A DNA stretch of 63,704 nt, filler included, from Octopus bimaculoides (Eukaryota), in NCBI RefSeq assembly GCF_001194135.2. It is 3 parts of 3 records of this genome, joined end to end, with 100 filler letters (N's around TTAATTAATTAA, not from the genome) between each part and the next. Parts side by side here need not be neighbours in the genome. Positions count along the whole stretch, not along the records: positions 1 to 31,391 come from NC_068988.1; 2 more parts are not named here. One strand, written 5' to 3'. A program made the position numbers and the translations under genes. Below are positions 3,663 through 50,666 of the stretch, one piece after another. Each line of letters starts with the position of its first letter. Within the stretch, counting starts at the first letter, position 1. Under the pieces are notes generated by a model, which was given only the letters and a program-made list of their open reading frames with translations, searched no databases and was not told where the DNA came from.

Positions 3663-3848
3663 TAGAAATGATTGAAGTGTTAAACACAATTATGGAATAT
3701 GGTTATAAAGTATTGAGTTGATAACGAGTGAAAAAAATCTCATTCACATTAAATAAAGATCTTATGAAAATTACATTGTACTTAAGTAAATGTTTTTTGG
3801 TGGAAGTCTGTGTGAAAGTCAGTGGATGAATATTATTCTAATCTTCAA

Positions 3849-4234
3849 AGGTGGTGAGTTGGCAGAAACGTTAGCACACTGGGTGAAATGTTTAGCAGTA
3901 TTTCGTCTGCCGCTACGTTCTCAGTTCAAATTCCGCCAAGGTTGACTTTGCCTTTCATCCTTTTGGGGTCGATTAAATAAGTACCAGTTATGCACTGGCT
4001 CGATGTAATCGACTTAATCTGTTTGTCTCCTCTGTGTGTAGCCCCTTGTGGGCAGTAAAGAAATAAGAAACATTAGCCTGCCAGGCAAAATGCTTAGCAG
4101 TATTTCCGCAAAGGTTGACTTTGCCTTTCATCCTTTCTGGGTCGATAAAATAAGTACCAGTTGTGTACTGGGGTTGATATAATTGACTGGTTGCCTGCCC
4201 AAAAATTTCGAGCCTTGTGCCGAGAGTAGAAAAG
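3849..4234 (+). mobile_element. Dimeric tRNA-derived SINE family B
   Basis: Two tandem cores (gactttgcctttcatcctt..gggtcgat.aaataagtaccagtt) joined at aaagaaataagaaac(a)ttagc. 17-bp TSD attatt(c/t)taatcttcaa at 3832-3848 and 4235-4251. Confidence 0.88.
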
Positions 4235-6395
4235 ATTATTTTAATCTTCAAGATAAAGTCAGGAGTGTGTAGTAGAAGTAGGATTTTGAGACTGTGCTTA
4301 TGCAAAGAAATCTTATATTTGTCTCCCTCAGGTGATCCTTTCTCTTGATTTCACTATATAAGGTTCAAGCTACAACATCATGCCCCACAGGCATGTTGTA
4401 CAATGTGGACATTTTCAAACTGCTACATATGATATGGGTGACATCTTCAATGTTAATTGCAGAGTCTGAGTTAGTTGTCACATCTAAGTAGTTTACTGAC
4501 ATCCCTGTCCTTTTTGAGCATCAAGTATTTTCTTATTACCATAAAAACCCATGTAAACTACGCACCTGTGTAATTTATGCAGGTGATTTTCAGGATAAAA
4601 TTTGTTAAAAAATGCTTCTACTCGTGTAAAATTCACACCCAAAAGTTTTCAGAATTGCCTATGTAACCAGGGAGAAAGGGCTTTAAATTTAGTTGTATTT
4701 AGCATAATTTCACTTACTTATGATTAAATTTTATTAAATTTTCATTAAATAAGAATAGTTTCTGTTTAACAGGTATCACATTGAAAGCTATTAAATTACA
4801 AAGTGTTTCTGTTGTTTATGATAAGCTTTATTTTACATTTCTTGCCCACAAGAGATTATGTCTGATCTTTCGCATACTGCTGTAAGTCTTCTAAAATCAC
4901 GATCATAGGAAAAGTTGTTGATGAGAATTACCAACAAAAACAAAGCTGATAAATATGCACAGGTACTGCAAATTAAGTTTAATTGCCAATAAACATCAGC
5001 TTGGATGACGCTTTACTCAACCAACAGAGGAAGGTGACCGATCAAACTGATTATGTAAACAGAGTTCTTTTCCACTTATTCTTGTCAGAACCTTTGATAT
5101 GGAGTACTGAAATTTTAATCCCTTTCACTTATAAAATGTCAAGCAAACTTAAAAATTTGTCATTACCATTATTGTCAGTATGGGCAGAACTTATGAATCA
5201 TTTGCTGTGAAGTAGAAATTAAATATGTTGAATATGCATTTGAATGTGGCAATAGTGCCAGTGTTAAAAATTAGCTTAAACAGTACGACAAACTTAAAAC
5301 TGTGCCCAGTAATAAACAGACAGAAATAAAAACATACAGTCAAGATTATCCATATCAAGACATTTTTTCCAGTCAGGAATATCCATTTTATTATATATGT
5401 CAATGGTGCTCCATTGTGATAGGTAGAAACTCCAAGCAATGTAAAATACAGCCCTGCATGTTTACCAGCATGAACGTCACATTTCAAAAAGTAGTTAACC
5501 ATTTAATTGTTTTAGTAAATTTATACAGAAAATTTAAGCATTATACCAGCCAGCATAAATAAAAGTCAACTTCGTATTTAAGCCATTATTTTTTCTGTAA
5601 AAACCTATTTTGACATTAAATGAGTCAACCTCTGGTACGAATGTTTGTTTTGTATGTCTTAAAGCAACAAATAAATTTCAAAAAACAATTCTGGAAATGA
5701 TCTACTCATGTAAATTATGCATCCACTAAAATTTATTTTTATTTTTGCAAAAAAAGTACGTAAATTACGTGGGTTTTTACGGAATTTTCTGCTTCTATTT
5801 TGAAAAAGCATATCCTTCAAAGTGAGAGCTAATATCTCAATTGTTAGTCCAAGATGAACTACTCTTGTTGTCAATGTGTGTACGTAAATCTATCTATCTA
5901 TCTATTAATATATATCATATGTAAAGCTCTTATATATATANNNNNNNNNNNNNNNNNNNNNNNNNNNNNNNNNNNNNNNNNNNNNNNNNNNNNNNNNNNN
6001 NNNNNNNNNNNNNNNNNNNNNNNNNNNNNNNNNNNNNNNNNNNNNNNNNNNNNNNNNNNNNNNNNNNNNNNNNNNNNNNNNNNNNNNNNNNNNNNNNNNN
6101 NNNNNNNNNNNNNNNNNNNNAGGCTAAATGTCTTAATATATTATGTTTGGTGCATCAATTTTTTGAGTTCAAAAGCTGCCAGGATGAACATAGTCTTTCA
6201 TCTCTCTGGGGGAAGGTCAATGAAATAAGTGCCTCTAATATACTGCTTTTAATTCATTTCAATATAAGTCCTCCTTCAAAACATCACTTCTTATTAGTTA
6301 AAAGAAAATATTAATTTAAAGTGCTTCCATTGCAATAAAATACGAGCTGGTTGTTAGAAAAGTGACAAGGCATTTTTGTATGTGTTTAGTTAGGC

Positions 6396-7665: not shown

Positions 7666-7876
7666 AGAAGGCAGTGAGCTGGCAGAAATATTAGCACACT
7701 GGGCGAAATGCTTACCAGTATTTCATCTGTCTTTACATTCTGAGTTCAAATTCTGCCCAGGTTGGCTTTGCCTTTCATCCATTCGGGGGCAATAAATTAA
7801 GTACCAGTTGCATACTGGGGTTGATCTAATCAACTGGCCTCCTCTCCCAAAATTTCAGTCTAGGGAAGAAAAGAAA
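7666..7876 (+). mobile_element. SINE family B monomer
   Basis: A-box-like tggcagaaatattagc, B-box gagttcaaattc, shared core. 12-bp TSD atcaaagacata at 7654-7665 and 7877-7888. Confidence 0.9.
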
Positions 7877-7934
7877 ATCAAAGACATAGGAACTGACTTT
7901 TTTTAACTCCTTTTTATTATTATTGGTCAACTAA

Positions 7935-8151
7935 AGGCAGCAAGCTAGCAGAATTGTTAGCACACTGGGAAAAATGGTCAGAGGCATTTTTTTTGCCATT
8001 ATGTTTTGAGTTCAAATTCTGCCAAGGTCAACGTTGTCTTTCATCCTTTCGAGGTCGATAAAACAAGTACCCATTAAGCACTAGGGTGGGGCGATGTAAT
8101 CGACTTACCTCTTCCTACAAAATTTCGGGCCTTGTACCTATAGTAGAAAAG
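7935..8151 (+). mobile_element. SINE family B monomer
   Basis: Same head and core, tail aaatttcgggccttgtacctatagtagaaaag. Flanked by attattattggtcaactaa at 7916-7934 and 8152-8170. Confidence 0.9.
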
Positions 8152-8855
8152 ATTATTATTGGTCAACTAAATAACTAATTAACCAATTAAGCAATTAACT
8201 GATTGCCAGATGAATCATTCAAATACTCTGTCAGACACTCTATCTGGTTTGTTGGAGTCATTTCATCACCATTTTGGAACTCATATGACCCTCATTTCAC
8301 ATCAAGAATCTTACAAAATGACATGCAATAAGGTTCTTCATCAAGTAGAGCTCACTGAATGCTGAATGTCAAGAAGTCAGTAGCTGCTGTCTAATCAAGT
8401 TTTAGGGCTGGGCTGTTTCAATGTTCAGACATGTCTATGATCACCATTGCACTGTTTTCCTGAGGGTTGCAAATAACTCTAGTTTCTTCAAACGGCTATA
8501 CATAGAAGTGCCTTGGTATTCTATTTCACAGATAAATACTTAGATATATGAAACTGAATAAAAAGATGACACTAATAGCATGCATAAATTTGCAAAAAGC
8601 TTCCCATCCTGTATGCATTTGGTCGGTAAAAAGAAAAATAATTAAAATTCATTACTTAGAGTAAATCAAATGAAGTTATGAAAAGCTTTGCATGTTTTGT
8701 TTGAATCACTAGCACATTAAATTTTCAGTGTATAAATAAACAAATATAGACACATTGTACCTTTGGACTGTGGATTCCCCTTGTAGTTTAAGTATCACCA
8801 ACTTGTGTTAAAATTTTATGTGCATGTGTGTGGAATATTTATGCATATTTTACAT

Positions 8856-9045
8856 GACGTCCGTTTTCCATGCTGACATGGGTTGGATGGTTTGACTGGA
8901 GCTCATAAGGCCAGGGGCTGCACCAGGTTCTACTGTCTGTTCTGTCATGGTTTCTACAATTGGTTGTCCTTCCTAATGCCAACCACTCCACAGAGTGTAA
9001 TGAGTGATTTTTATGTGGTGCCAGTACCAGTACTTTTAATGTGAC
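8856..9045 (-). mobile_element. 3' end fragment of the RTE LINE family
   Basis: gacgtccgttttccatgctgacatgggttgg...tcctaatgccaaccactcc is the reverse complement of the 3' end at 20585-20728. Confidence 0.85.
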
Positions 9046-10540
9046 ACACATACACATACATACATTATAACTGATAGACTAAACTGCCAAAACTATGAAT
9101 TTGACATTTTCGCTCTTTTGGCTGGTATCCTGAACATGCTTACTTTGAATTATCTGATGTTTAAATATGTTTGGAAATATTATATGAATGCTATTGAGAA
9201 AATGCTTATCATCATGTATTTTAGCACATTTGTGCAAGTAAAGCATGTAAAAATTCATACTTTCATTTCATTTCTGTCTCTTGAGACATACTTTCACTTC
9301 ATTTCTGTCTCTTTAAAACTTATCATTGCATAAGGTTTTTAAATCTGAAACAAAGGACATCACATTCAGAACTCTTTTCTTAATGAAATTGCCTTGTTGT
9401 TTCAGCAAAAAACTATTTTTTTCAAAACACTTCTAAGCCAGTAGTTTATCTACAAACCAGACTGAAAACTTACAAAAAATACTTAATTCCATGCATACAA
9501 GCTGACAAAAGAAGGTTTTCTTTTGTTCAAACAGTTACTTCTTCAAAACAAAAATCTTGAATTTTTACTCCAACAAAGTTTACACTATGTTGTTAATTTG
9601 AAGTTGCCATTCTTGATGGGCTATGCCTTATCTACAATCTATCAAGTAATTTTGAATTTGTGAGCATTTCCTTCATCTAACAACCATATAAATTTCAGTA
9701 AAACCATAGAACATATATAAGGTCTGACAAATGAATGTTTCAATTTATAAAATCTATTTTTTAATGTCATTTAAGTTATTCCAGTGTGTATATTAAGTTC
9801 ATTTTTGCTGTTTATTTCTACTCTAGTACTGTATACTCTTGATTTTGCCTAACAGTTACCTCCTAGTGAGGAATAATCACAAATTCTGCTGTTGCACAAT
9901 TGGCATTAGCTGGCTGTTTGCCTCTCTATGTCATTTGACATTGCAGCATTGCAATCTCTGACATAACAAATGAAATCTTTATTAGCTAGATAACTAACCT
10001 TAACACAGTCAACATCTTACTATACTTATGCCCCAGGGAAAATGGTAATGTATTATATAGAGAATTTCCCAGTTATATTTGTTCTTATTTCTAGACTAAA
10101 ATATGGGTTCTACCATAAACTATTCCTTTACCAATCTCAATTTATATGCTGTGCTCTCTTAGTGATTTTTACAGCTTTAATTTTATTGGAGAACTCACTA
10201 TTTCTAAGTGATTCACTATAATAACCAACAGTCCTTCATCAGAAAATATTGAGAACATCTGTTTATTTATATTGTTGACTAACTTCCCCAAGATATTAAG
10301 TGGGTGATTAAATTTCCAATGTATGTACACCGTTTTCTCAATCAGCTAGTGTTAGGTTTTGAAGCTATTATTATCATCTAGTTTCATTTACATATTAATT
10401 TCAGTCATTTATAATTTGTCTCTTCTTGATGAATTAATAGAAATTAGCATGTTTGTGTGTATAGCTAGATTGATAGACAGATAAATGGATGGACAAACAG
10501 GCAGGCAGACAAACAAATACAAATATATATATATATATAT

Positions 10541-10625
10541 ATCATCATCATCATCATCATCATCGTTTAACGTCCGCTTTCCATGCTAGCATGGGTTGGA
10601 CGATTTGACTGAGGACTGGTGAAAC
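10541..10625 (-). mobile_element. RTE 3' terminus with (ATG)n tail, truncated by gap
   Basis: (atc)n-gtttaacgtccgctttccatgctagcatgggttggacg matches the RTE 3' end. Confidence 0.85.
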
Positions 10626-12544
10626 NNNNNNNNNNNNNNNNNNNNNNNNNNNNNNNNNNNNNNNNNNNNNNNNNNNNNNNNNNNNNNNNNNNNNNNNNNN
10701 NNNNNNNNNNNNNNNNNNNNNNNNNNNNNNNNNNNNNNNNNNNNNNNNNNNNNNNNNNNAGAGAGAGAGAGAGAGATAGAGATAGATAGATGGGCAATAC
10801 ATACACACATTTGATTGCTCCATCCCAGCTGTCAATGGAATTTCTGACTTTCCATCCATGACCTCCCAGTCCTGTTGCATGGTTTGAAAATAAGAATAGT
10901 AATTTACTGGGTGCTTCCAACTGGTTATATTTGAATAGGTCAACAAGCTTCCATCACCATAAGACCTTCAAGAGATGATATGACAATGAAGTCATCCTAA
11001 AAGGACATCAGTACATTATTGGATAGTAATGATAAATGTTTATACAACACGAGTACCATTATCTGAGTCTCTCTGATGAGTACCTAGTTACATACATACA
11101 TATATACATACATACATGCATGCATACATACATACATACATACATGCATGCATGCAAGCAAACAAATTGACAGACAACAAACAAACAAAACAAACAAATA
11201 TGCACATGTGATAGGTACCTGATCTACAGTATGTAAAAATTAACTGTTCTTTTTAGAGACACAAATAATTACTTGCATGAGATTTGAAATCATAGACTTC
11301 TACTAAAGCCTACCCAAGAGACAATAATAGCTATATGAGCTGCTATAACCATTTACACACTAGAAAAAAAAGCGATGGGAAACACACAAAAACATACAAA
11401 AAAATAGCAAACAAAAAATATCACAACTTTAACAAACTATTGCAACAGTGACAACAAAACCTTTAAACATTTTCCTCCAAATATAAATGCAACAAAAACT
11501 ATCTTTTAAGCCAAAAAATATAACAAATATAGAACCACAGTGAATATTTACAGCAACCTGCACTGTTACATGATGCAAAGATATCCCTTAATCATATTAG
11601 TGTGGTCTACTGTTTAAAGCACTTGGGAGAAACTATTTCAACAACAACCATTGTGAAAATCTAGCACAAACATTTTTTGGACAAGAAATCTAACTGGAAT
11701 TCTAAAGAAGCTGTTTGCAGTGCACATAAATATTCTGTAATTCCTACAGATGCAGCCCATAGAGTTTCTTCAATTTGGGATAAAAGTGATAAAACTCATC
11801 TTGTTTGTTAATTTGTGAAAGAAATCAACTGCAAATAGTTTTTGCCAAGATAGACATTTTTATTCAAAAGACATAGTTTGCTAAATCGTGCATATTAACG
11901 TAAGCTTCTGCAATTTCTTCTCTTCAAGTCTGTAGAGATTTGTCCAACTTTGGAAGATTATAGAATTCTGGTTTCTAATTCCAGAATACTATAGGCCTCC
12001 TAAATCTAGTTGTTGCTTTGGCCATAACTAAAAACACTACCTGCTATATTTATATTCTTAGTCAAACTGTAGATAGCTTTGTCTACTTAATGTATTAAAT
12101 ATTTGCTAAATGAAGAAACATTAATACACATTCTACTTAATCATATACCTATAGGTTATCTTCTTTAACTTTCTACACTTAATTTAATCCAAGCTAATCT
12201 CTTGCTATTTTCTCTTTATTAATGAGGAAGCTGTAATTAATTACACAAGCTTATCCACATCACTAACTCTGTTAATGCCAATTTGCGCCTGCATCTTTCA
12301 ACAGTAAATGTTTTTCAGTTATTGTTTGAAATTATCATGCCTACCAGCTTAAATTTACTCTTTTCTAACTGTAATATTTGACAGTCATTTTAAGGGGTTT
12401 AATAAAACTCACTCTTGTCTGAAGCTGTTCTTTTGTATACCCACATTTGATATTTCACGATTTAAGACATCAGGGTTACTTCCCCACATTTTTAGACTAG
12501 AATTAAATCATTAACTGAATGTATTTTTCTCCCAACTACGAGTG

Positions 12545-12997
12545 TAATTACCCTGTACGCATAAGCAAAGGCAAGGTATTGTAATTACTCGTTTTTGTCT
12601 GTTTGTCAGTGTGTCTTCAAAATTACTGGAAAATGGGTGAATGGATTTTCACTCATTGGGTGACTGGCTTGAAGTGTTTGTCTTCAAACATACATAAATA
12701 CATACATAAATATGCGTCTATGTGTGTGTGTGTTCGTGCATGCGTGTGTGCAGGGATGGATTGGAGGGTTTAATTTATTTACGAGTTGGTTTCTTAATTT
12801 CACCGGGGTATAATTACCAATAATGGTGAAACACTTCTCAAATTCTATGCAATATTTTCTATAAGAATTTCATTTTGTACACTTCCTTTTTTTATATGAA
12901 TCGACCCTCGTCTGCCTGTATATAGACCATGGTGTACCTATGCACGAAGACACGTGTGGGTACATACGTATACAAAAATACATACATGGATATTCAG

Positions 12998-13064
<67 letters not shown>

Positions 13065-13552
13065 TGTGTGTGTGTGTACAGTGATGGCTTCAAGGGTTTC
13101 ATTTATTTATGAGTTGATTTCCATATTTCACCAGAGTATAAATACCCATAATGGTGATACTTAAAAAAAAAAATCAAACTTACAAAGTTTCTGATAAGCA
13201 AATGGTCATATTATTTATATCCCATAATGAACTACAGTACGTTTGATTCACTTGCTAACATTGAAAGACGTTGAAAACACTTAAATTCTAAGCAATATTT
13301 GCTATAAGTATTTCCTTTTGTTCACTTTTTCATATGAATCGACCCTCATCCGCATGTGTATAGATCCTGGTATACCTATGCACATACAAATGTGTGGGTA
13401 CATACATACATACGTACGTGACTCTGTGTGTATGTGTGCGCGTGTGTTTGTGTACAGTGATGGATTCGAGGGTTTCGTTAAGTTATGAGTTGATTTCTCA
13501 ATTTTGCTAGGCTATAAATACCTATAATAGTGATACTTGAAAAAAAAATTGA
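12545..13552 (+). mobile_element. Modular non-autonomous element with internal degenerate tandem units and microsatellites (HINE/Helentron-like)
   Basis: Blocks cag(g/t)gatgg.tt..agggttt..gagttg.ttt recur at about 12750, 13078 and 13453; tatgaatcgaccctc at about 12895 and 13333, separated by (TG)n. 5' part attaccctgtacgc..tttgtctgtttgtc..caaaattact..ggattttca resembles invertebrate HINE-type starts (recollection, unverified). Confidence 0.5.
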
Positions 13553-13860
13553 TAGGAGTGGCTGTGTGGTAAGTAGCTTGCTTACCTTGTGAGTGGATTT
13601 GGTAGATGGAAACTGAAAGAAGCCCGTCGTATATATGTATATATATATATATATGTCTGTGTTTGTCCCCCCAACATCGCTTGGCAACCGATGCTGGTGT
13701 GTTTATGTACCCCTAACTTAGCGGTTCGGCAAAAGAGACCAATAGAATAAGTACTAGGCTTCCAAAGAATAAGTCCTGGGGTCGATTTGCTCGACTAAAG
13801 GCGGTGCTCCAGCATGGCGACAGTCAAAAGACTGAAACAAGTAAAATAGTAAAATAGTAA
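13553..13860 (+). mobile_element. SINE family A, young (CpG intact), with internal deletion
   Basis: Head jumps from gcttgcttac to cttgtgagtgg, lacking the core present in 42040-42462; tail nearly identical to 42270-42450. Confidence 0.92.
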
Positions 13861-14058
13861 TTCAGTTCAATTAAAAAGCATGGGTAAGCAATATGTTGTA
13901 AGCCACACCATGATTTGCAAAAAATTTATCTGCACGCAGGGTATTCATTTTAATTGAAATTTGTTTTACTCATTTCATTATGCATACTAGAACTGACTTT
14001 ACTTTCTGTTCATCATGCTGTAGGTGAACATGAGAAATTGCCATTAGTCTTATTTATT

Positions 14059-14896
14059 TAAAATTTATTAATAAGGGTAAAAATTGATATTAATCAATTA
14101 AAACCAGTGGTCTAGCATATTAAAAAAATCCGAAGATTAAAATTATATTACATACAAAAATAAGAGGGATGACCAGCAAAAGTGGACTCCTATATGCTAG
14201 AAATAGATGCCGAACCATCTAACCACGAAAAAATATGTTCTCAATAAAAAAATTAGCGACACAACAGACTGTAAAAGGGCAAGACAAATGAAAAAATACT
14301 AAATAAAAAAAAAACGATTAACCTACGTACCATGGTTTCACCTGTTAAAATTTACATAAGTAAATATCTGCAGGATCATCAGCATAGTCTGTCGATTTAG
14401 AAATATAATTTCCAGAATTAGACATAAGACGCCCACCCGAGAGGGAGTACGTGTAGAGTTCTACAAATTACATTCAGTGTATCCCTTGAAATGTCTTCAA
14501 TCTGGTGCACTAAGTCCGGAAATAACTCTGCAGTTAATAAATTTTTGCAGCTAATTTACCGGTTTGAGAACATCATTATTTAAAATTTATTGATAAGGGT
14601 AGAAATTGATATTAATCAATTAAAACCAGTGGTCTAGCATATTAAAAAAATCCGAAGATTAAAATTATATTACATACAAAAATAAGAGGAATGACCAGCA
14701 ACAGGTGAAACCATGGTATGTAGGTTAATCGTTTCTTTTTTAAATTTTGTATTTTTTCATTTGTCTTGCCCTTTTACAGTCTGTTGTGTCGCTAATTTTT
14801 TACTGAGAACATATTTTTTGTGGTTAGATGATTCGGCATATATTTCTAGCATATAGGAGTCCACTTTTGCTGGTCATTCCTCTTATTTTTGTATGT
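14059..14896 (-). mobile_element. Non-coding Penelope-like/retrozyme-like insertion (family PLE-a) with direct terminal redundancy and inversion
   Basis: TSD (gt)cttatttatt at 14047/49-14058 and 14895/97-14906. About 125-bp direct repeat 14054-14178 vs 14576-14700 (period 522, 3 mismatches). About 197-bp inverted repeat 14150-14346 vs 14700-14896. Hammerhead motif on the minus strand. Confidence 0.8.
14323..14387 (-). ncRNA. Minimal type I hammerhead ribozyme
   Basis: Minus strand: ctatg-CTGATGA-t-cctg(...atttac ttat gtaaat...)cagg-t-GAAA-c-catg-g-TA-cgtag. Stem I 5 bp (one G-U), stem II cctg/cagg, palindromic CCATGG stem III, cleavage triplet GUA. All core nucleotides canonical. Confidence 0.85.
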
Positions 14897-15487
14897 CTTA
14901 TTTATTCATTTAGCTTTATATTTGAAGCAATTTAGTACACAACATTTCCACACAGATATACACAGGGATACTTAGACAGACATATACAGATATAATGTTT
15001 AGGAGTTGGATTGCATAATCTCTTTAAACCTTCATCTGGTCAAGGTGGACTTATCCATCTGCCTGACTACGGTAGATATTTTTCTTACTTGACAATCGGG
15101 AAAAAAACATTATAGCATTTGCAGAAATCATCTGAAAATTGACATAACTGTCTGTCTGTCACATTTTGTGAGATTTTAAAATTACGTTAAAATTTTCAAA
15201 TTTGGTATTCTAAAATAATTTTTCATGTCAAATCCGATTTTGTTATTTATTTGTTTCAGAAAAAAAAACATTGCAGAAAAATTTACTGAGGTTTAAAGTT
15301 TAATCAGTTTTACCTAATCAGAAAATATGATCTGGAAGCTGGCAATTTCTGCATGATAGCTGGCATTTTCTGCGTGATAGCTGTATATCCCAAAATGAAA
15401 ACAAAATCATTAGGAGGAGGAATTTTAGTTAAACAAACGAAAGCAAAGCATTACGACGACCAAAGTGGTAAGAACTTCTAAACATTT

Positions 15488-15761: not shown

Positions 15762-16157
15762 GTTTTAATGAATAAAATCATGTGAAGCGGTTAAACAGAT
15801 ATGGGTTCAGATGGAGTATATGTAATTGAACCTCCCCCCTTTTTTTGCGGAATCCCACGTTTTAGGCTATGNNNNNNNNNNNNNNNNNNNNNNNNNNNNN
15901 NNNNNNNNNNNNNNNNNNNNNNNNNNNNNNNNNNNNNNNNNNNNNNNNNNNNNNNNNNNNNNNNNNNNNNNNNNNNNNNNNNNNNNNNNNNNNNNNNNNN
16001 NNNNNNNNNNNNNNNNNNNNNNNNNNNNNNNNNNNNNNNNNNNNNNNNNNNNNNNNNNNNNNNNNNNNNNNNNNNNNNNNNNNNNNNNNNNNNNNNNNNN
16101 NNNNNNNNNNNNNNNNNNNNNNNNNNNNNNNNNNNNNNNNNNNNNNNNNNNNNNNNN

Positions 16158-16488
16158 AGCAGTGAAAACATGGTTCCTTCAACGTGTACCTGATAGAAGT
16201 GCAGCATCACTTGAAGCCGTTACAATTGAAAATGTATTACCGGGTCCTATAGTACATACGGACAAATGGGCCAGCTATAGGAATCTACAACAGCTGGGTT
16301 ACATACACAAAACAGTTAACCACTCAACGAATTTCGTCGACCCTGAAACTGGCGCTTGTACGAATCACATTGAGGCCTATTGGTCCCGAATTAAAAGACT
16401 GCTGAAGTATGTGACTAGATCATCGGGCGACATGAAATGGTCCCACGTTTTTGAATCCATTTCTCATCATATGTTACAATTCGATTGA
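16158..16488 (+). pseudogene. Merlin (IS1016/IS1595, ISXO2-like) DDE transposase C-terminal fragment
   Basis: VPDRSAASL...IVHTDKWASYRNL...YIHKTVNHSTNFVDPETGACTNHIEAYWSRIK carries the typical xxTD-W-xY, VNHS and TNxIExxW motifs; 5' part lost in a gap. Confidence 0.88.
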
Positions 16489-16524: not shown

Positions 16525-16896
16525 GCAGGCTTTTTCATTGTGTTCATGTGGAACCCACTTATCCAAGCTTTTCACTTTACCGATTTGAACTAGGTGAGTC
16601 AAAATTGTTTACTTGCCAACAACAAACAACAACGATAATTGACAGGTACTTTGAGATGGATCTGACTGGACGGTGGCTCTCAGTTTGTCATTAACCACCT
16701 TTATTTCTGATCGACTGCATTTCTCATTTGTGAGATCAAAGTTACGAGAACGAAATTTTGTAAACCAATTTGATACAGTCAACTGTGTAATAACATTAGA
16801 ATAAAATACTCCATTAATATTCCGAGCTGTATATGCTGCTGTATTTCCAAGAAAGAACTCATATTTCAAAACTGTACGAATTTCCGACTTATCCAT
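16525..16896 (-). pseudogene. Mariner transposase N-terminal (HTH) fragment
   Basis: MDKSEIRTVLKYEF..GNTAAYTARNINGVF..TVSNWFTKFRS (HTH_48-like); after a frameshift IGKVKSLDKWVPHE (WVPHEL motif) at about 16540-16580. Confidence 0.9.
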
Positions 16897-17421: not shown

Positions 17422-17700
17422 CACCATCATCATCATTTAATGTCCGTTTTCCATGCTGGCATGGGTTGGATGGTTTGACAGGAGCCAGTAAGGTTCAGAG
17501 TCACACCAAGTTCCACAGTCTGCTTTGGCTTGTTTTCTACCACTTTACATGTATTGGGTTCTTTTTATGTGACACCATCACCAGTGCTTTTTAAATGGTA
17601 CAAGCACCAGTCATTATTACTCGGCACCAGAGCTATTTATTTGGCTCCAGTGCTTTCTACGTGGCTCTGGCACCAGTGCTTTCTGCATGGTACCATGAAA
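17422..17700 (-). mobile_element. RTE 3' end fragment
   Basis: (atc)n-atttaatgtccgttttccatgctggcatgggttggatgg; reverse complement of the RTE 3' UTR including decayed ggcaccagt units. Confidence 0.82.
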
Positions 17701-17771
17701 CATAACCTATAAAGAAAATTACCAATATAAACCTATATATATATGTATATATATATAATATATAAACAATT

Positions 17772-20728
17772 ATCAGTAAGGGCAAAAGAAAAGCCTGGGG
17801 AACATTACTGGAGTTCTGTGAAGCCTGTAACCTTTTAATCTGCAACACTAACTTCAGGAAGCCAGACAGCCACCTGATAACCTATCAATCAGGTGACTCT
17901 GATAGTCAGATTGATTTCATACTCACTAGACAGTAGGATGCAGGGTTGCTCTTAAATACAAAGACCCTTCCGGGTGAAGAATGTACCTCCGCCCCAGCAT
18001 AGACTAGTCATTAGTGACTTTAGGCCAGAACGATACCAAGAAGCAGACCAATCCAGAAAAGCAGGATTTGGAAGCTAAAGAACCCTTCACATGCTCAGAG
18101 ATTTAGGGACATCCTCATCAAGAAATTTGATGAGAGGGAGGAGGAGCTACAGACCTTGGACATAGAAGGTAGCTGGAAATTCCTATGGGACAGCTTACTG
18201 AGTGCCACAGACCAAGTCTGCGGATGGTACAAAGTCCCTTCCAGACCTAGAGTAATGAGGTGGTGGAATAATATGATAGACAAAGCCATCAGAGCAAAGA
18301 AACAGGCCTGGAAAGGTAGGGGTAGCAGGGAGCTATACCAGATAGCCAGAAGGGAGGCTGGGTGACAGGTATACATAGCCAAGGATGGGGCAGAAAAGAA
18401 GAAGTCTGCCAATGTCCAGCAACATGAGGACCAAAGAACTGAAGTATTTCGGATTGCAAGACAGTTTGTGAGAGGAAATTGTGATATCGGTGCACTTGCT
18501 TTTAATGATTCGGAAAAGAAAGAGGCTTGGAGAAGCCATTATGAAAGACTGCTGAATGTGGAGTATGATTGAGATGAGGAGAGCCTACCAAATGTTGACC
18601 CAGTAGATGGACCAGCTATCAGAATTGACAGCACCCTGGTAGATAAAGCAATTAAGGGTATGAAGTCAGGAAAACCCCCAGCATATTAGGAATCACTGCT
18701 GAGATGCTTAAAACATCTGGTTGTGTGGGCTATGGCCTAGTCACCCATATTATAAACCAGGTAGAGTTCATGATGGAGTCATACTCAATCACTGGCATAG
18801 CAGCACCATAGTCAGGGTGCTACAAGGGTAAAGGCAATGCTTTAGATAGAAATAACTACAGGGGTATCAAACTGCTGAATCATGTGATGAAGGTTACAGA
18901 GAGGGTTATAGCCCAACTAATTAGGGAGAGAGTCTGCTTAGATGTGATGCAGTTCGGTTTTGTGCCAGATAGAAGCACCACTGATGCTATATTCCTGGTA
19001 CAGCAACTGCAGGAGAAATACCTAGCCAAAGTACTTGGCTTTTGTGGACTTGGGCCTTTGACAGGATCCCCTGATCCCTTTTCTGGTGGGTGATGTGGAA
19101 ACTGGGGATTGACGCAAGGTTAATAAGGGCCTATATAGACCCTAGGCCCTATAAAAACAGGCCGTATGCAGAGATGCCATTAGTAAGGTTAGGGTTGGCA
19201 ATGAGTATAATGGTGAATTCCGGGTAGAAGTAGGGGGTCTACCAAGGATCAGCCTTCAGCCCTCACTTATTCATCATAGTCCTTCAGGCAATAACAGAGG
19301 AATTCAAAATTGGTTGCCACTGGGAGTTCCTCTATGCTAATGACCTGGCCCTCATAGCAGAATCCCTACCAGAACTAGAGAAGAAATTTCAGGTGTGGAA
19401 GCAAGGTTTAGAATTGAAGGGCCTTAGAGTCAATGTTGCAAAGTTCAAAGTTCTAGTAAGTAGAAAGGTGAACACATCACACATCCCTTCAAGTAGTTGG
19501 CCCTGCTCGATCTGTAGAAGAGCTGTAGGTAGGAACTCCATAAAATGTACCCAGTGTAAGCTATGGACACATAAGAGGTGCAGCAACATCAAAGGGAGAT
19601 TAACCGAGAAGATAGCTTTCATGTGCAGCAGATGCACTGGGGCAATAAACACCACAGATACTCAGAAAACAGATTCCATCACATGCCAGGGGGGAGAAAC
19701 TAGAAGTAATTGATAGATTCCGCTACCTAGGTGACCAAGTCTGTAGTAGGTTGGATGCTCAAAGAGTGTTACCACTAGAATAAGAATAGCCTGGGCAAAG
19801 TTCAGAAAGCTTCTACCCCTGCTGGTGACAAATGGCCTCTCATTCAGAGTGAAGGGTAGATTGTATGATACATGTGTATGAACTGCCAAGCTTCATAGCA
19901 GTGAAACATGGGCCATGACTGCTGAAGATATGCATTGGCTCGAAAGAAATGAAGCTAGCATGATCTGCTGAATGTGTAAAGTTAGTGTGGACACACGACA
20001 GAGTGTAAGTGCTCTGAGAGAAATGTTGGACATAAGAAGCATCGGGTGTGGCATGCAAGAGAGAAATTTGCGTTGGTATGGTCATGTACTCTGGATGGAT
20101 GAGGAGAGCTGTGTGAAGACGTGCCACTCCAAAGCAGTGGTAGGAATCCGGGGTAGAGGGAGACCCAGGAAGACATGGGATGAGGTGGTGAAGCATGACC
20201 TTCAAACATTGGGCCTCACAGAGGCAATGACAAAAGACCGAGACCTCTGGTGATATGCTGTGACTGAGAAGACCCGGCAAATAAAGTGAGTTCATAGCTG
20301 TAACCTACAACAGTGTCGCATAACCAGCCCACTCAAAAGTACCTTGGATTGTAGGGCAACATGCCATGCTTGAGGAGACCTATTGAGTCAAGTACATCAA
20401 AATCAAATGGAAATTGTAGTTATGATCTCCGTGCCGGTGACACATAAAAAGCACTGTCCGAACGTGGCCGATGCCAGCGCCACCTTGACTGGCTTCTATG
20501 CCAGTGGCACGCAAAAAGCACCAACCGACCATGGTTGTTGCCAGCACCCTCTGGAACCCTGTGCATGTGGCACGTAAAAAGCAGCCTCGGAGTGGTTGGT
20601 ATTAGGAAGGGCATCCAGTGCCAGATCAGACTGGAGCCTGGTGCAGCCTCCTGGCTTTCCAGACCCCAGTCAAGCCGTCCAGCCCATGCCAGCATGGAAA
20701 ACAGACGTGAAACGATGATGATGATGAT
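17772..20728 (+). mobile_element. 5'-truncated RTE-clade LINE (end of APE, RT, PHD insert, 3' UTR, (ATG)n tail), disrupted
   Basis: LLEFCEACNLLICNTNFRK..TYQSG..QIDFIL (APE end), NNYRGIKLL, QFGFVP..STTDAIF, YQGSAFSP, LYANDL (YADD), FRYLG, LRWYGHV...GRGRPRKTW (RTE C-terminus). Multiple stops and frameshifts. Confidence 0.95.
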
Positions 20729-20960: not shown

Positions 20961-21669
20961 AAACCCACCATCATACACACACGTCTACACTTGCATAAAT
21001 ACCAATAAACACCACTGAATACACACAAATCATTTACTCAAAGCTGTCATCTAAATGAAACATTCCACCAGTTCTGGTGGTGGTGAAATCCAGCATTTGC
21101 TGAAGTATGTGGTGAAGTGTATCCACTTGAATATACACATTGCTGGATTTAACTCTTCTATATTTGTAATCTGTTTCTATATCATATAATTAAACTGACT
21201 TTTATCTAGTCACTAATGATTTGAATAAAGTGGAATTGCTGATACATTTTAAATATATGTTAGTGACTAATGGTAATATCTTATTTACTTGTTAGGGAAC
21301 TTTCTCAAATGTAACTTTTAATTAACCTAGATATTTCAATATTAAAGCAAATATAGTCTCTCACCTTCTCTTCCCATTTGAAATTGGATTATGATTAGAA
21401 TAAATAAACACACAAGCATAGCTTTGTTAAACAATGTGTGAATTAAATTTGTGGGAGAAGCATGTAAGATTTCACAATTGTTTGATGAGTGTAAGTTTTC
21501 TTTATCTTTAATCTTTTACTTGTCAAAGTCATTGGACTGTGGCCATGCTGGGGCACCAACTTGAAGTGTTTAGTTGCAGAAATAAATCTCCAGAATTTTT
21601 GTTTTATGAGCATTTTATAAGAATCTATTTTGAGAAAACCCAGCAAGCCAAATGAGATTATAGCTGTGG

Positions 21670-22130
21670 CTGATGCCAGTGTCGCATAATTGGCCCATTT
21701 AAAAATATCCCTTCAGTTGTTGGCAATATGCTGTGTTTGAGAAGACCTGTTGAGCCAAGGGAAATTGTAGACATGGTTGATACCAGTGCTGCCTGACTGG
21801 CAGCCATGCTGGTGGCACATAAAAAGTACCATTCAAGTATGTTTGATACCAGTGCTGCATGACTGGCTCCTGTGCCGGTGGCACATAAAAAGTACCATCT
21901 GAGTGTAGTCGATACCAGTGCCATCTGACTGGCTCCTATGCTGGTGGCATGTAAAAAGCACCCATTAAACTCTTGGAGTGGTTGGTGTTAGGAAGAGCAT
22001 TCAGCTGTAGAAACCTTGCCAGATCAGACTTGGGCCTGGTGCAGTCTCCTGGTTTGCCAGCCCCCAGTCAAACCATCCAACCCATGCCAGTATGGAAAGC
22101 AGACATTAAACAATAATGATTATGATGATG
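21670..22130 (+). mobile_element. RTE 3' UTR fragment with 66-bp tandem units
   Basis: gataccagtg recurs at 21779, 21845 and 21911 (period 66), followed by ggagtggttggtgttaggaag...ccatgccagtatggaaagcagacattaaa-(gat)n. Confidence 0.9.
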
Positions 22131-25900: not shown

Positions 25901-26209
25901 TGTCAGGGGATTTTGAAAAGTTCAAAATGAAATTGTTAAATGGATGGTACAGGTGTCAGNNNNNNNNNNNNNNNNNNNNNNNNNNNNNNNNNNNNNNNNN
26001 NNNNNNNNNNNNNNNNNNNNNNNNNNNNNNNNNNNNNNNNNNNNNNNNNNNNNNNNNNNNNNNNNNNNNNNNNNNNNNNNNNNNNNNNNNNNNNNNNNNN
26101 NNNNNNNNNNNNNNNNNNNNNNNNNNNNNNNNNNNNNNNNNNNNNNNNNNNNNNNNNNNNNNNNNNNNNNNNNNNNNNNNNNNNNNNNNNNNNTTTTGCA
26201 AAAAAAAAA

Positions 26210-26419: not shown

Positions 26420-26800
26420 ATGCACAAGGACACATCTGATGCCTCTTATGCCCAATTTTTCTCTCAAGATGTTGCCCTCTGTCCTACATGTACATTGACA
26501 TTGCACATCCATTGAAGCATACAAGCTTCGTTTCTTTCAAGCCTTCACATATCCTCTGCAGTCACAGCCCATGTTTTACTACCATATAGCTTGGCTGTTC
26601 AAACACAGGCATCATATAATCAGCTTTTCACTCCGAGAGACAGGGCTTTGTTACTGACAAGAGTAGGAATTCTCTGAACGTTGCCCAGCCCTTTCTTATT
26701 CTAAGAGGGTGTTAAAACACCTGAAAGTCATAGACAGGCAACATTCAAATGACCTCTTGCTGAGGAGGTAAAATCACACTGAAATAACATGTCTGGTAGT
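26420..26800 (-). mobile_element. Internal RTE RT/C-terminal fragment (same family as 17772-20728)
   Basis: Minus strand gtagtaaaacatgggctgtgactgcagaggatatg..gaaagaaacgaagct aligns with 19890-19960; peptide LREKLGIRGIRC. Confidence 0.85.
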
Positions 26801-27038: not shown

Positions 27039-27461
27039 AATCTACTTATTTATGTATTAGTCCATCTATCTATTTAGCTATATAAATGTATGTATATATA
27101 TATATATATNNNNNNNNNNNNNNNNNNNNNNNNNNNNNNNNNNNNNNNNNNNNNNNNNNNNNNNNNNNNNNNNNNNNNNNNNNNNNNNNNNNNNNNNNNN
27201 NNNNNNNNNNNNNNNNNNNNNNNNNNNNNNNNNNNNNNNNNNNNNNNNNNNNNNNNNNNNNNNNNNNNNNNNNNNNNNNNNNNNNNNNNNNNNNNNNNNN
27301 NNNNNNNNNNNNNNNNNNNNNNNNNNNNNNNNNNNNNNNNNNNNNNNNNNNNNNNNNNNNNNNNNNNNNNNNNNNNNNNNNNNNNNNNNNNNNNNNNNNN
27401 NNNNNNNNNNNNNNNNNNNNNNNNNNNNNNNNNNNNNNNNNNNNNNNNNNNNNNNNNNNNN

Positions 27462-27609
27462 AATGTAGGGATATTGTATTTGTAAATCCATTGTTTAGGC
27501 AGAATGGTATGCATATAAGATTTTTGGATTTTACTCACAAGGTATTGGAATCTTATATGTATACCATTCTGCCTAAACAATGGATTTACAAATGCAATAT
27601 CCCTACATT
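27462..27609. repeat. Near-perfect inverted repeat, 61-bp arms with 26-nt loop
   Basis: 27462-27522 vs 27549-27609; 2 differences, both G-U wobbles in the + strand RNA. The left arm abuts a gap and may be longer. Confidence 0.95.
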
Positions 27610-50548: not shown

Positions 50549-50666
50549 AAATTTAAATAATAAGGGTGAAAAATTGAGTATTAATTTAATTAATATTAAT
50601 TTAAAACCAGTGGCCTAGCATATTGAAAAATCTGAAGATTCAGAAAAATTATATTACATATGTAAC
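50549..50666 (-). mobile_element. Terminal fragment of family PLE-a
   Basis: aataagggtgaaaaattga..attaat..aaaaccagtggcctagcatattgaaaaatctgaagatt..aaattatattacata aligns with 14068-14153; starts at the edge of a (TATC)n tract and runs into a gap. Confidence 0.8.

What the first reader, a model, noticed from the sequence alone, without database searches (positions are those of the whole stretch)
14059..14896. Complete ORF-less, hammerhead-bearing insertion of about 1.25 units: candidate cephalopod retrozyme / circular-RNA retroelement
Seen: an 838-bp insert bounded by a 10-12 bp TSD, a fully canonical minimal type I hammerhead (14323-14387, minus), a 522-bp period with about 125 bp of terminal redundancy, no ORF, few internal mismatches (young), and a second dispersed copy of the same terminus at 50549-50666. 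Established: PLE pseudo-LTRs carry minimal type I hammerheads with palindromic stem III, and animal retrozymes are non-autonomous hammerhead-containing repeats that yield small circular RNAs. Inference: a self-cleaved RNA of about 522 nt was reverse-transcribed past one unit length (circular or tandem template) by a PLE RT in trans.
Basis: partly seen in the sequence, partly recalled or inferred. Interest (0 to 1): 0.85.

Follow-up and report, generated by a model that had tools for sequence, protein, structure and literature searches.

The report
Octopus hammerhead-bearing non-coding Penelope-type retroelement insertion
An 836-bp non-coding mobile-element insertion in an octopus genome carries a hammerhead-ribozyme-like motif and has the layout left by Penelope-like retrotransposon machinery; it is a likely new example of a known kind of element, not a new kind.

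Summary
The insertion is real. Bases 14059-14894 are flanked by a perfect 12-bp target-site duplication (GTCTTATTTATT), which arises by chance in about 0.1% of trials. The 522-bp period with about 126-129 bp of redundancy is real, and nothing in the insert codes for protein.

Read on the minus strand, the insert is an inverted 5'-truncated piece, then a 5'-truncated partial unit, then a full unit. This head-to-head layout, with a partial tandem, an AT-rich target and a short duplication, is the published signature of Penelope-like element (PLE) integration.

A hammerhead motif sits at 14387-14323 (minus). It was the only descriptor hit in 31 kb, against 0.007 expected. It is not "fully canonical": it has a U·U pair at 10.1/11.1 and no Rfam match. 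An active axolotl retrozyme hammerhead has the same U·U mismatch.

Both cDNA arms read through the cleavage site, so prior self-cleavage or a circular template is not shown. An uncleaved multimeric RNA fits equally well.

No other copy could be retrieved, so family size, tandem arrays, circular RNAs and the autonomous partner remain untested. Verdict: new member of a known kind, moderate interest.

The parts
14047..14058 (.). Left copy of the 12-bp target-site duplication GTCTTATTTATT. Its last 5 nt (TTATT) are also found at the internal unit junction 14576-14580, giving microhomology between the target primer and the template.
14895..14906 (.). Right copy of the 12-bp target-site duplication. 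Its first 2 nt (GT) overlap the homology of the inverted arm.
14059..14894 (-). Whole insertion, 836 bp, about 32% GC, non-coding. The element sense strand (the one carrying the hammerhead) is the window's minus strand.
14054..14575 (-). One full 522-bp repeat unit. It is the 3'-most unit in element sense, and its 3' end lies at the left edge of the insert.
14576..14701 (-). 5'-truncated upstream partial unit, equal to the 3'-terminal ~126-129 nt of the unit. It forms a pseudo-LTR-like direct repeat with 14054-14179, with 3 substitutions.
14700..14896 (+). Inverted arm: the reverse complement of 14150-14346 (94.5% identity, 8 substitutions and 4 indel columns). It joins the direct copy head-to-head. 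Its outer end corresponds to a unit position 91-96 nt short of the other arm's end.
14700..14704 (.). Inversion junction: 2 nt (AA) of strict microhomology between the direct and inverted homologies, or 5 nt (AACAG) with one mismatch.
   Evidence: and direct reading
14672..14704 (.). 33-nt stretch of the partial unit that is repeated in inverted orientation at 14864-14896 (97%). The two cDNA arms overlap by about 28-33 nt in unit coordinates.
   Evidence: (I4)
14323..14387 (-). Type I hammerhead-like motif.
- Helix I: CUAUG/CGUAG, 5 bp.
- Core: CUGAUGA.
- Helix II: U.U, then CCUG/CAGG, extended by AUUUAC/GUAAAU.
- Core: GAAA.
- Helix III: 2 bp plus the palindromic loop CAUG (ACCAUGGU is self-complementary).
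- Cleavage triplet: GUA.
14327..14328 (-). Predicted self-cleavage site, 3' of A17 (14328) and 5' of C1.1 (14327).
   Evidence: direct reading
14702..14724 (+). 3' half of a hammerhead in the inverted arm (CAGGUGAAACCAUGGUA|UGUAGG, with C1.1 changed to U at a CpG). It lacks the CUGAUGA half, so it is not a ribozyme by itself.

Best explanation
This is a retrotransposed copy of a non-coding, roughly 522-nt repeat unit that carries a dimer-type type I hammerhead. It is a non-autonomous, retrozyme-like derivative or passenger of Penelope-like elements (PLEs). PLE-type RT and GIY-YIG endonuclease machinery, supplied in trans, inserted it into AT-rich octopus DNA.

Inferred sequence of events:
1. 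An RNA of hammerhead polarity (window minus strand), longer than one unit, served as template. It was either an unprocessed multimeric transcript of a tandem array or a circle.
2. The endonuclease made nicks staggered by 12 bp in GTCTTATTTATT. The plus-strand nick falls after ...ATT.
3. Both 3'-OH ends primed reverse transcription at internal sites of the RNA. The plus-strand primer used 5 nt of microhomology and copied 643 nt (1.23 units, 14059-14701). The minus-strand primer used 2 nt of microhomology, started 91-96 nt further upstream in unit coordinates, and copied about 195 nt (14894-14700).
4. The two cDNAs were joined head-to-head at 14700-14701 through 2-5 nt of microhomology. Gap repair then produced the 12-bp TSD.

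Shown: the TSD, the three-part architecture, the microhomologies, the motif and the lack of coding capacity.
Inferred: the enzyme family, the RNA template and the order of steps.
Not shown: ribozyme activity, RNA circles, family copy number, and the identity of the autonomous partner.

The locus itself has one complete hammerhead. It is therefore most likely a dead-end copy rather than a source of unit-length RNA.
For: - The TSD is a perfect 12 bp at independently defined boundaries, with chance about 0.00125.
- The direct repeat with a 522-bp period and the inverted repeat are the two most similar repeat pairs in the whole window.
- The layout of inverted 5'-truncated copy, partial tandem and full unit, head-to-head, with the inverted piece overlapping the direct one by about 30 bp, matches published PLE insertions. 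[quoted passage not shown] The general PLE description agrees (PMC8557442).
- Purified PLE protein cleaves AT-rich DNA at ATT on both strands, extends both, and starts reverse transcription internally. Hammerhead cleavage is not needed for insertion (PMC11167929).
- With target-primed synthesis at both ends, the template polarity deduced from the geometry is the strand that bears the hammerhead.
- The hammerhead descriptor gives exactly one hit in 31 kb on both strands, inside the insert, against 0.007 per dinucleotide shuffle.
- Two copies are predicted to cofold with an 8-bp intermolecular helix III. The canonical double-hammerhead register scores -36.6 kcal/mol, against -35.2 for two monomers and -40.0 for the dimer MFE.
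- A U.U at the base of helix II occurs in the active, dimer-preferring axolotl retrozyme ribozyme HHR_Amex2 (PMC7229834).
- There are no ORFs or Pfam domains, and GC is 32%.
- The host is an Octopus, and O. vulgaris has 30 recently active Penelope families (PMC13282606).
Against: - Only this one copy could be examined. Repetitiveness, tandem arrays, conservation or covariation of the hammerhead, and homology to an octopus PLE pLTR are all untested.
- No Rfam hammerhead model matches at any threshold.
- The 10.1/11.1 pair is U.U, whereas G-C is 'highly conserved' in PLE minimal hammerheads (PMC4209133).
- The monomer MFE fold is not the hammerhead fold, and its stability is unremarkable (z = -1.5).
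- The dimer MFE uses a helix I register shifted by about one nucleotide, which absorbs C3.
- The unit (522 nt) is larger than the 170-400 nt of the retrozymes first described.
- The two outer ends differ by 91-96 nt, more than the 30-40 nt PLE 'tail'.
- The minus-strand nick is not at an ATT.
- Repeats that should have been identical at insertion differ by 2.4-5.5%.
- No PLE RT or GIY-YIG remnant was seen in the window.
Confidence: 0.65

Rival explanations
1. This is a one-off deletion derivative of an autonomous octopus PLE, essentially pLTR/UTR sequence left after loss of the ORF. It would not be a member of a distinct, propagating non-coding (retrozyme-like) family.
For: - The architecture is that of PLE insertions.
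- PLE hammerheads with short palindromic helix III lie in pLTRs next to the ORF start.
- An ATG sits in the helix III loop (ACCAUGG) and opens only a 26-47 aa frame. This could be a relic of an ORF start.
- Solo-pLTR constructs that carry non-coding DNA are known.
Against: - The 522-bp period is written into the cDNA (1.23 units). The template RNA therefore already lacked an ORF before insertion.
- No RT or endonuclease remnant is detectable in the unit.
- The distinction from the best explanation is one of copy number, which cannot be measured here.
Confidence: 0.15
2. The hammerhead-like motif is a chance or decayed, non-functional match. The insert would be an ordinary non-autonomous retroposon, or a rearranged repeat mobilised by other machinery such as a LINE with twin priming.
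For: - No Rfam hammerhead hit.
- U.U at 10.1/11.1.
- No second copy is available to test covariation.
- LINEs are abundant around the locus, and twin priming gives 5' inversions for L1. The L1 point rests on established knowledge, not on a test here.
- At 0.007 chance hits per 31 kb, a genome of 2-3 Gb would hold hundreds of chance motifs.
Against: - The chance that a given 836-bp insert holds such a motif is about 2e-4.
- The motif lies on the strand that the insertion geometry identifies as the template.
- There is no poly(A), A-rich or microsatellite 3' tail at either end.
- More-than-unit-length tandem copying is typical of PLEs and retrozymes, not of LINE- or SINE-type insertions.
- There is no tRNA, 5S or other Rfam-detectable head.
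Confidence: 0.1
3. This is a cut-and-paste DNA transposon or foldback element with ~200-bp terminal inverted repeats (MULE-like), with the repeats at 14150-14346 and 14700-14896.
For: - Long inverted repeats of about 197 bp.
- A TSD of 9-12 bp would be near the Mutator range. This rests on established knowledge, not on a test here.
Against: - The left inverted-repeat arm starts 91-96 bp inside the TSD-defined left end, so the repeats are not terminal.
- The sequences next to 14150 and 14896 show no duplication.
- The extra left-hand 96 bp is repeated directly inside the element with a 522-bp period. A terminal-inverted-repeat model does not explain this.
- The inner ends of the arms are not symmetric.
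Confidence: 0.03
4. This is an assembly artefact: a mis-joined or collapsed repeat in a gap-rich short-read scaffold.
For: - The window has many N gaps.
- PLE tandem and inverted structures are known to confuse shotgun assemblies.
Against: - There are no Ns within 14000-15000.
- The perfect TSD and the microhomology junction are what biology predicts, not what mis-assembly predicts.
- The repeats are diverged (94-97%) rather than identical.
Confidence: 0.03

Closest known systems
Penelope-like element insertions (Penelope/Poseidon/Neptune-type), e.g. Adineta vaga Pen2a_Av and pLTR-only trans-mobilised constructs (PMC3846280); general description in PMC8557442; biochemistry in PMC11167929
   Same: - Partial tandem giving pseudo-LTR-like direct repeats.
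- An adjacent head-to-head inverted 5'-truncated copy that overlaps the direct one (15 bp in Pen2a, about 30 bp here).
- A short TSD (8-10 bp there, 12 bp here).
- An AT-rich target with a nick after ATT.
- Unequal outer ends ('tail').
- A hammerhead with short palindromic helix III on the sense strand.
- cDNA reading through the uncleaved ribozyme site.
   Different: - No RT/GIY-YIG ORF, and the unit is only 522 bp.
- The hammerhead lies outside the part that happens to be duplicated in this copy.
- The offset between the outer ends is 91-96 nt rather than 30-40 nt.
- 10.1/11.1 is U.U rather than G-C, and there is no bulged base between A9 and 10.1.
- Homology to any PLE pLTR is untested.
Metazoan non-LTR retrozymes (Cervera & de la Pena 2020, PMC7229834; Li et al. 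2026 preprint, 10.64898/2026.07.22.740005)
   Same: - Non-coding, low-GC repeat unit with a type I hammerhead.
- A TSD longer than 4 bp.
- More-than-unit-length copy.
- Co-occurrence with PLEs in the host clade.
- Helix III of 2 bp plus a palindromic tetraloop, and a U.U at the base of helix II, as in axolotl HHR_Amex2, which works best as a dimer.
- A unit length within the 51-972 bp range reported in 2026.
   Different: - Only 1.23 direct units and one complete ribozyme at this locus, whereas retrozyme loci are dimers to multimers.
- The unit is larger than the 170-400 nt first described.
- An inverted arm is present.
- Circular RNA and self-cleavage are untested.
- Loop 1 / loop 2 tertiary contacts are not recognisable.
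- No cephalopod example was found in the searchable literature.
L1 'twin priming' 5'-inverted insertions
   Same: - Two cDNAs primed from both nicked target strands.
- The cDNAs are joined at an internal junction by microhomology, with a small duplication at the inversion point.
- The insert is flanked by a TSD.
   Different: - No poly(A) priming.
- The template is longer than one unit of a short repeat.
- For PLEs, extension of both strands is an intrinsic property of the enzyme.

Membership tests
Hammerhead ribozyme (type I, dimer-type/minimal helix III) | Conserved core CUGANGA ... GAAA ... U-H cleavage triplet in the right order | tested here: met
   The motif reads CUGAUGA / GAAA / GUA^C at 14382-14376, 14339-14336 and 14330-14328 (minus strand). 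It is the only descriptor hit in 31 kb.
Hammerhead ribozyme (type I, dimer-type/minimal helix III) | Three helices around the core: helix I of at least 4-5 bp (open), helix II of at least 4 bp (closed), and a short helix III with a palindromic loop | tested here: met
   - Helix I is 5 bp.
- Helix II is 4 bp plus 2 plus 6 bp.
- Helix III is 2 bp plus the loop CAUG, and ACCAUGGU is self-complementary.
- Cofolding gives an 8-bp intermolecular helix III.
Hammerhead ribozyme (type I, dimer-type/minimal helix III) | G10.1-C11.1 pair closing helix II (highly conserved) | tested here: not met
   The pair here is U10.1. U11.1. The active axolotl HHR_Amex2 has the same mismatch, so this does not exclude activity.
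Hammerhead ribozyme (type I, dimer-type/minimal helix III) | Match to a curated covariance model (Rfam Hammerhead families) | tested here: not met
   No hammerhead hit at gathering score, nor at E<=10 on 1151-nt and 101-nt slices. Minimal PLE-type variants are known to escape standard descriptors.
Hammerhead ribozyme (type I, dimer-type/minimal helix III) | Covariation or conservation across family members, and self-cleavage | not testable with these tools
   No second complete copy is available, and there is no wet-lab assay.
Metazoan non-LTR retrozyme | Tandem array of two or more units, so that a monomer is flanked by two hammerheads | tested here: not met
   The locus has 1.23 direct units, one complete hammerhead, and one 3' half in inverted orientation.
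Metazoan non-LTR retrozyme | Non-coding, low GC (<45-50%), no LTR/PBS/PPT, TSD >4 bp when present | tested here: met
   - No ORF over 64 aa and no Pfam hit.
- GC is 31.8%.
- The TSD is 12 bp.
Metazoan non-LTR retrozyme | Unit size about 170-400 nt (2020 definition); 51-972 bp in the 2026 survey | tested here: inconclusive
   At 522 bp the unit is outside the first range and inside the second.
Metazoan non-LTR retrozyme | Expression as unit-length linear and circular RNA | not testable with these tools
   No transcriptome access. The circular-unit fold is only moderately more stable than shuffles, on both strands (z = -2.9 and -3.8).
PLE-mediated insertion (GIY-YIG endonuclease plus RT integration signature) | Partial tandem (pseudo-LTR) plus head-to-head inverted 5'-truncated copy at the 5' side, bounded by one TSD | tested here: met
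   compared.
PLE-mediated insertion (GIY-YIG endonuclease plus RT integration signature) | AT-rich target with cleavage at ATT, and internal initiation of reverse transcription with differing outer ends | tested here: inconclusive
   - The target GTCTTATTTATT is AT-rich, and the plus-strand nick follows ATT.
- The minus-strand nick does not follow ATT.
- The outer ends differ by 91-96 nt, against 30-40 nt for the canonical tail.
Autonomous Penelope-like element | Single ORF with telomerase-like RT and a GIY-YIG endonuclease | tested here: not met
   No such ORF or domain in the insert. It is therefore non-autonomous at best.
PLE-derived non-autonomous element | Sequence homology of the unit to the pLTR/UTR of a PLE from the same genome | not testable with these tools
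No PLE remnant was seen in the window.

The most novel reading that the evidence does not exclude
The insert is a fossil of an active cephalopod retrozyme family whose 522-nt unit is released by a dimer-type hammerhead, circularised, and copied by rolling-circle reverse transcription by an octopus PLE. That would extend ribozyme-derived circular RNAs to cephalopods, with an unusually large unit. It would also give a natural record of dual-strand priming on a circular template.
Probability: 0.2. Interest if true: 0.55.

Novelty: new member of a known kind. Interest (0 to 1): 0.35.

Why it matters
If genome-wide data confirm it, this would add cephalopods to the animals that hold hammerhead-bearing, non-coding passengers of Penelope-like elements. 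It would also supply candidate loci for small ribozyme-derived circular RNAs in octopus tissues.

The single locus is a clean natural example of what purified PLE protein does in vitro. Both target strands are nicked and extended, reverse transcription starts internally, and synthesis reads through an uncleaved ribozyme. This supports the view that animal retrozymes ride on PLE machinery.

It does not reveal a new mechanism or a new class of element.

Tried and rejected
1. Rfam at gathering score on the whole piece, and at E<=10 on two smaller slices, gave no hammerhead or any credible family.

2. Looked for other copies. blastn (word 9) and nhmmer of the unit against the rest of the window found none.

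3. Tried to reach octopus DNA through exact-protein look-ups of element and flank ORFs and of an O. bimaculoides hit. All four were 'not on record'.

4. Searched a concatenation of all open frames of the element against the 5.8-billion-protein collection, hoping for spurious gene calls on other copies. There were no hits.

5. Ran exact-pattern scans.
- The family-specific 22-mer AGGTGAAACCATGGTAYGTAGG found nothing in metagenome or viral contigs.
- The general pattern CTGATGA-N20-45-GTGAAACCATGGTA returned 120 loci. All were chance matches in conserved bacterial genes (14 distinct sequences), and none had helices I or II.

6. The monomer fold of the ribozyme region does not give the hammerhead fold and is not unusually stable. 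This is expected for a dimer-type motif, so it is uninformative.

7. The tRNA scan for a SINE head found none.

8. The terminal-inverted-repeat DNA transposon reading was rejected, because the left arm is 91-96 bp inside the TSD-defined end.

9. A full six-frame Pfam scan of the window for PLE remnants was prepared but not run. Visual inspection and the ten ORFs tested showed only ISXO2-like, mariner and LINE remnants.
Full report
**Observation**

The sequence at 13800-15200 holds a discrete insertion.
- A perfect 12-bp direct repeat, GTCTTATTTATT, lies at 14047-14058 and 14895-14906. It brackets 14059-14894 (836 bp).
- I took 4000 random pairs of positions 837 bp apart in this same window and allowed +/-8 nt of slop at each boundary. 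Only 0.125% gave a match of 12 bp or more.
- The boundaries are defined independently by the internal repeats, so the target-site duplication (TSD) is real.
- The 522-bp period is also real. 14054-14182 equals 14576-14704 at 96.9%, and strict homology runs 14054-14179 / 14576-14701 with three substitutions.

- The remaining right-hand part of the insert is not unexplained unit sequence. 14700-14896 is the reverse complement of 14150-14346, at 94.5% over 199 columns with 8 substitutions and 4 indel columns.
- The direct and inverted homologies meet at 14700-14701. The microhomology there is 2 nt (AA), or 5 nt (AACAG) if one mismatch is allowed.
- The 33 nt at 14672-14704 are repeated in inverted orientation at 14864-14896 (I4).
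- On the minus strand, which carries the hammerhead, the insert reads 5'-[inverted piece, 195-197 nt]-[5'-truncated partial unit, 126-129 nt]-[full unit, 522 nt]-3'.
- The two orientations meet head-to-head and overlap by about 30 nt in unit coordinates.
- '1.25 units' therefore describes only 14059-14701 (643 bp, 1.23 units).

**The hammerhead**

- The minus strand 14387-14323 reads CUAUG-CUGAUGA-U-CCUG...CAGG-U-GAAA-CCAUGG-UA^C-GUAG.
- I ran a relaxed minimal-hammerhead descriptor on both strands of the 31-kb piece. It required the CUGANGA and GAAA cores, helix I and helix II of at least 4 bp, a palindromic segment between A15.1 and U16.1, and UH. It tolerated a bulge or one mismatch at the base of helix II. 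It hit exactly once, here. In 300 dinucleotide shuffles the mean was 0.007 hits, and 0 for a stricter version.
- The chance that a given 836-bp insert carries such a motif is therefore about 2e-4.
- The motif is not 'fully canonical'. Positions 10.1/11.1 are U.U rather than the G-C pair that Cervera & de la Pena list as highly conserved in PLE minimal hammerheads (PMC4209133).
- No Rfam hammerhead model matches, at gathering score or at E<=10, even on a 101-nt slice.
- The monomer's minimum-energy fold keeps helix II but pairs the helix I 5' strand with the helix III sequence. Its stability is ordinary (z = -1.5).
- Two copies cofold at -40.0 kcal/mol, against -35.2 for two monomers. The dimer has an 8-bp intermolecular helix III (ACCAUGGU), both helix II hairpins, and helix I strands paired in trans, although the register is shifted by about one nucleotide and absorbs C3. 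The exact double-hammerhead register evaluates to -36.6 kcal/mol.
- This is the behaviour expected of dimer-type animal hammerheads.
- The axolotl retrozyme ribozyme HHR_Amex2 (about 60,000 copies) has the same features: a 2-bp helix III with a tetraloop and a U.U mismatch at the base of helix II. It cleaves weakly as a monomer and efficiently as a dimer (PMC7229834).
- The inverted arm carries only the 3' half of the motif (14702-14724), with C1.1 changed to U at a CpG.

**Coding capacity, composition, context**

- The longest stop-to-stop frame in the insert is 64 aa. The four longest frames have no Pfam match.
- GC is 31.8%.
- There is no tRNA-like head, and no poly(A) or simple-repeat tail at either end.
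- The circularised unit folds somewhat better than shuffles on both strands (z = -2.9 and -3.8). This is weak evidence and does not single out one strand.
- The surrounding window is repeat-rich animal DNA with many assembly gaps.
- An ISXO2-like transposase fragment 1 kb downstream is 82% identical to three Octopus bimaculoides proteins, so the host is an octopus.
- No other copy of the unit exists in the piece.
- The element's internal repeats are the most similar repeat pairs in the window.

**Mechanism**

The layout matches what is published for Penelope-like elements (PLEs).
- In Adineta vaga Pen2a the inverted pLTR overlaps the direct one by 15 bp and the whole insert is flanked by a 9-bp TSD. 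pLTRs alone suffice to move unrelated, even non-coding, DNA in trans (PMC3846280).
- Frangieh et al. showed that a purified PLE protein cuts AT-rich DNA at ATT on both strands, extends both strands, and starts reverse transcription at internal sites of the RNA. It does not need hammerhead cleavage, 'unprocessed RNA' being the dominant substrate (PMC11167929).

Applied to this locus:
- Nicks staggered by 12 bp were made in GTCTTATTTATT, the plus-strand nick after ...ATT.
- The plus-strand 3' end annealed through TTATT/AAUAA and copied 643 nt.
- The minus-strand 3' end (...GAC) annealed through 2 nt, 91-96 nt further upstream in unit coordinates, and copied about 195 nt.
- The two cDNAs were joined at 14700-14701.

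Three consequences follow.
- With target-primed synthesis at both ends, the template polarity is fixed by the geometry. It is the strand that carries the hammerhead.
- The template had a 522-nt period before insertion, so it already lacked an ORF.
- Both arms cross the predicted cleavage site (14328/14327 and 14718/14719), and no end or junction coincides with it. The template was therefore either uncleaved multimeric RNA or a religated circle, and this locus cannot distinguish them.

The snap-back alternative has the first cDNA fold back onto itself at CTGTT, 14342-14346. It gives the same product and is not excluded.

The repeats differ by 2.4% (direct) and about 4-5.5% (inverted), including CpG transitions. 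With the calibration used for O. vulgaris repeats (JC 0.065 is about 18 My), and assuming the repeats were identical at insertion, this suggests an age of a few million years. This is inference.

**Comparison and membership**

- As a hammerhead, the motif meets the core and helix criteria. It fails the G10.1-C11.1 and covariance-model criteria. Activity and covariation are untestable here.
- As a retrozyme locus, it meets the non-coding, low-GC and long-TSD criteria. It fails the tandem criterion, with one complete ribozyme in 1.23 units. Its unit size lies outside the 170-400 nt of the 2020 definition and inside the 51-972 bp of the 2026 survey.
- As a PLE-mediated insertion, it meets the architectural signature but has no RT/GIY-YIG ORF.
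- The most accurate label is a non-autonomous, retrozyme-like passenger or derivative of PLEs.
- A 2026 preprint argues that animal retrozymes are exactly that (10.64898/2026.07.22.740005).
- Octopus vulgaris is reported to have 30 recently active Penelope families (PMC13282606), so partners exist.
- I found no paper linking retrozymes to cephalopods.

**What failed**

Every route to further copies failed.
- Exact-protein look-ups found nothing on record.
- A protein search with all open frames of the element gave no hits.
- A family-specific 22-mer found nothing in metagenome or viral contigs.
- A general hammerhead pattern returned only chance matches in bacterial genes.

Family size, tandem arrays, permutation, ribozyme conservation, circular RNA and the autonomous partner therefore remain open.

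**Verdict**

The insert, the TSD, the period, the motif and the absence of an ORF are real. The inverted arm was missed, and the ribozyme is a non-canonical, dimer-type variant.

PLE-type mobilisation of a non-coding hammerhead-bearing unit is the best explanation, at about 0.65. The self-cleaved circular template is not shown.

This is a new member of a known kind. I score interest at about 0.35. The locus is a tidy natural illustration of dual-strand priming by PLE machinery and a lead to cephalopod retrozymes, but it is not a new mechanism.

Noticed in passing
window 14330-14335 (minus) and 14713-14856 (plus): The palindromic helix III loop is ACCAUGG, an ATG in a Kozak-like context. It opens a 26-aa frame in the full unit and a 47-aa frame in the inverted arm. 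In PLEs the ORF start lies next to the hammerhead, so this could be a relic of a PLE start codon.
   Followed up: partly
window 15826-16488 (+): ISXO2-like (IS1595-family DDE) transposase fragment interrupted by an N gap. Pfam PF12762 matches at E = 8e-16, and it is 82% identical to three Octopus bimaculoides UniRef proteins. This identifies the host genus.
   Followed up: yes
window 16609-16896 (-): Mos1/mariner-type HTH_48 domain fragment (Pfam E = 3e-12), a decayed Tc1-mariner copy.
   Followed up: partly
window ~17700-20300 (+), with a related inverted piece at 26431-26703: Decayed non-LTR (LINE) reverse transcriptase, with a PHD/C1-like zinc finger near its C-terminus (19393-19713) and a typical LINE C-terminal tail (19972-20253). 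It is not a PLE.
   Followed up: partly
window 21773-21962 and 20265-20728 / 21631-22126: A 66-bp tandem repeat (2.9 copies, 81%) sits inside a ~500-bp dispersed repeat that occurs twice at 69% identity. Related ~90-160-bp pieces lie at 8857-9013, 10532-10619 and 17442-17540, so it is probably a SINE-like family.
   Followed up: no
window 3848-4240 and 7668-8157: Several tandem or dispersed copies of a ~160-bp repeat at 74-87% identity, an unidentified short interspersed repeat.
   Followed up: no
window 27462-27609: A 148-bp stretch that matches its own reverse complement at 83% (a palindrome), directly next to an N gap. It could be a foldback repeat or an assembly edge effect.
   Followed up: no
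window 12829-13172 vs 13275-13548: Two diverged copies (67%) of a ~300-bp repeat on either side of a (TG)n microsatellite, just upstream of the insertion.
   Followed up: no
window ~5950-6200, ~10640-10780, ~15870-16160, ~25960-26200, ~27110-27460: Runs of N (assembly gaps) every few kb. The piece comes from a gap-rich scaffold, so larger repeat structures nearby may be incomplete.
   Followed up: no
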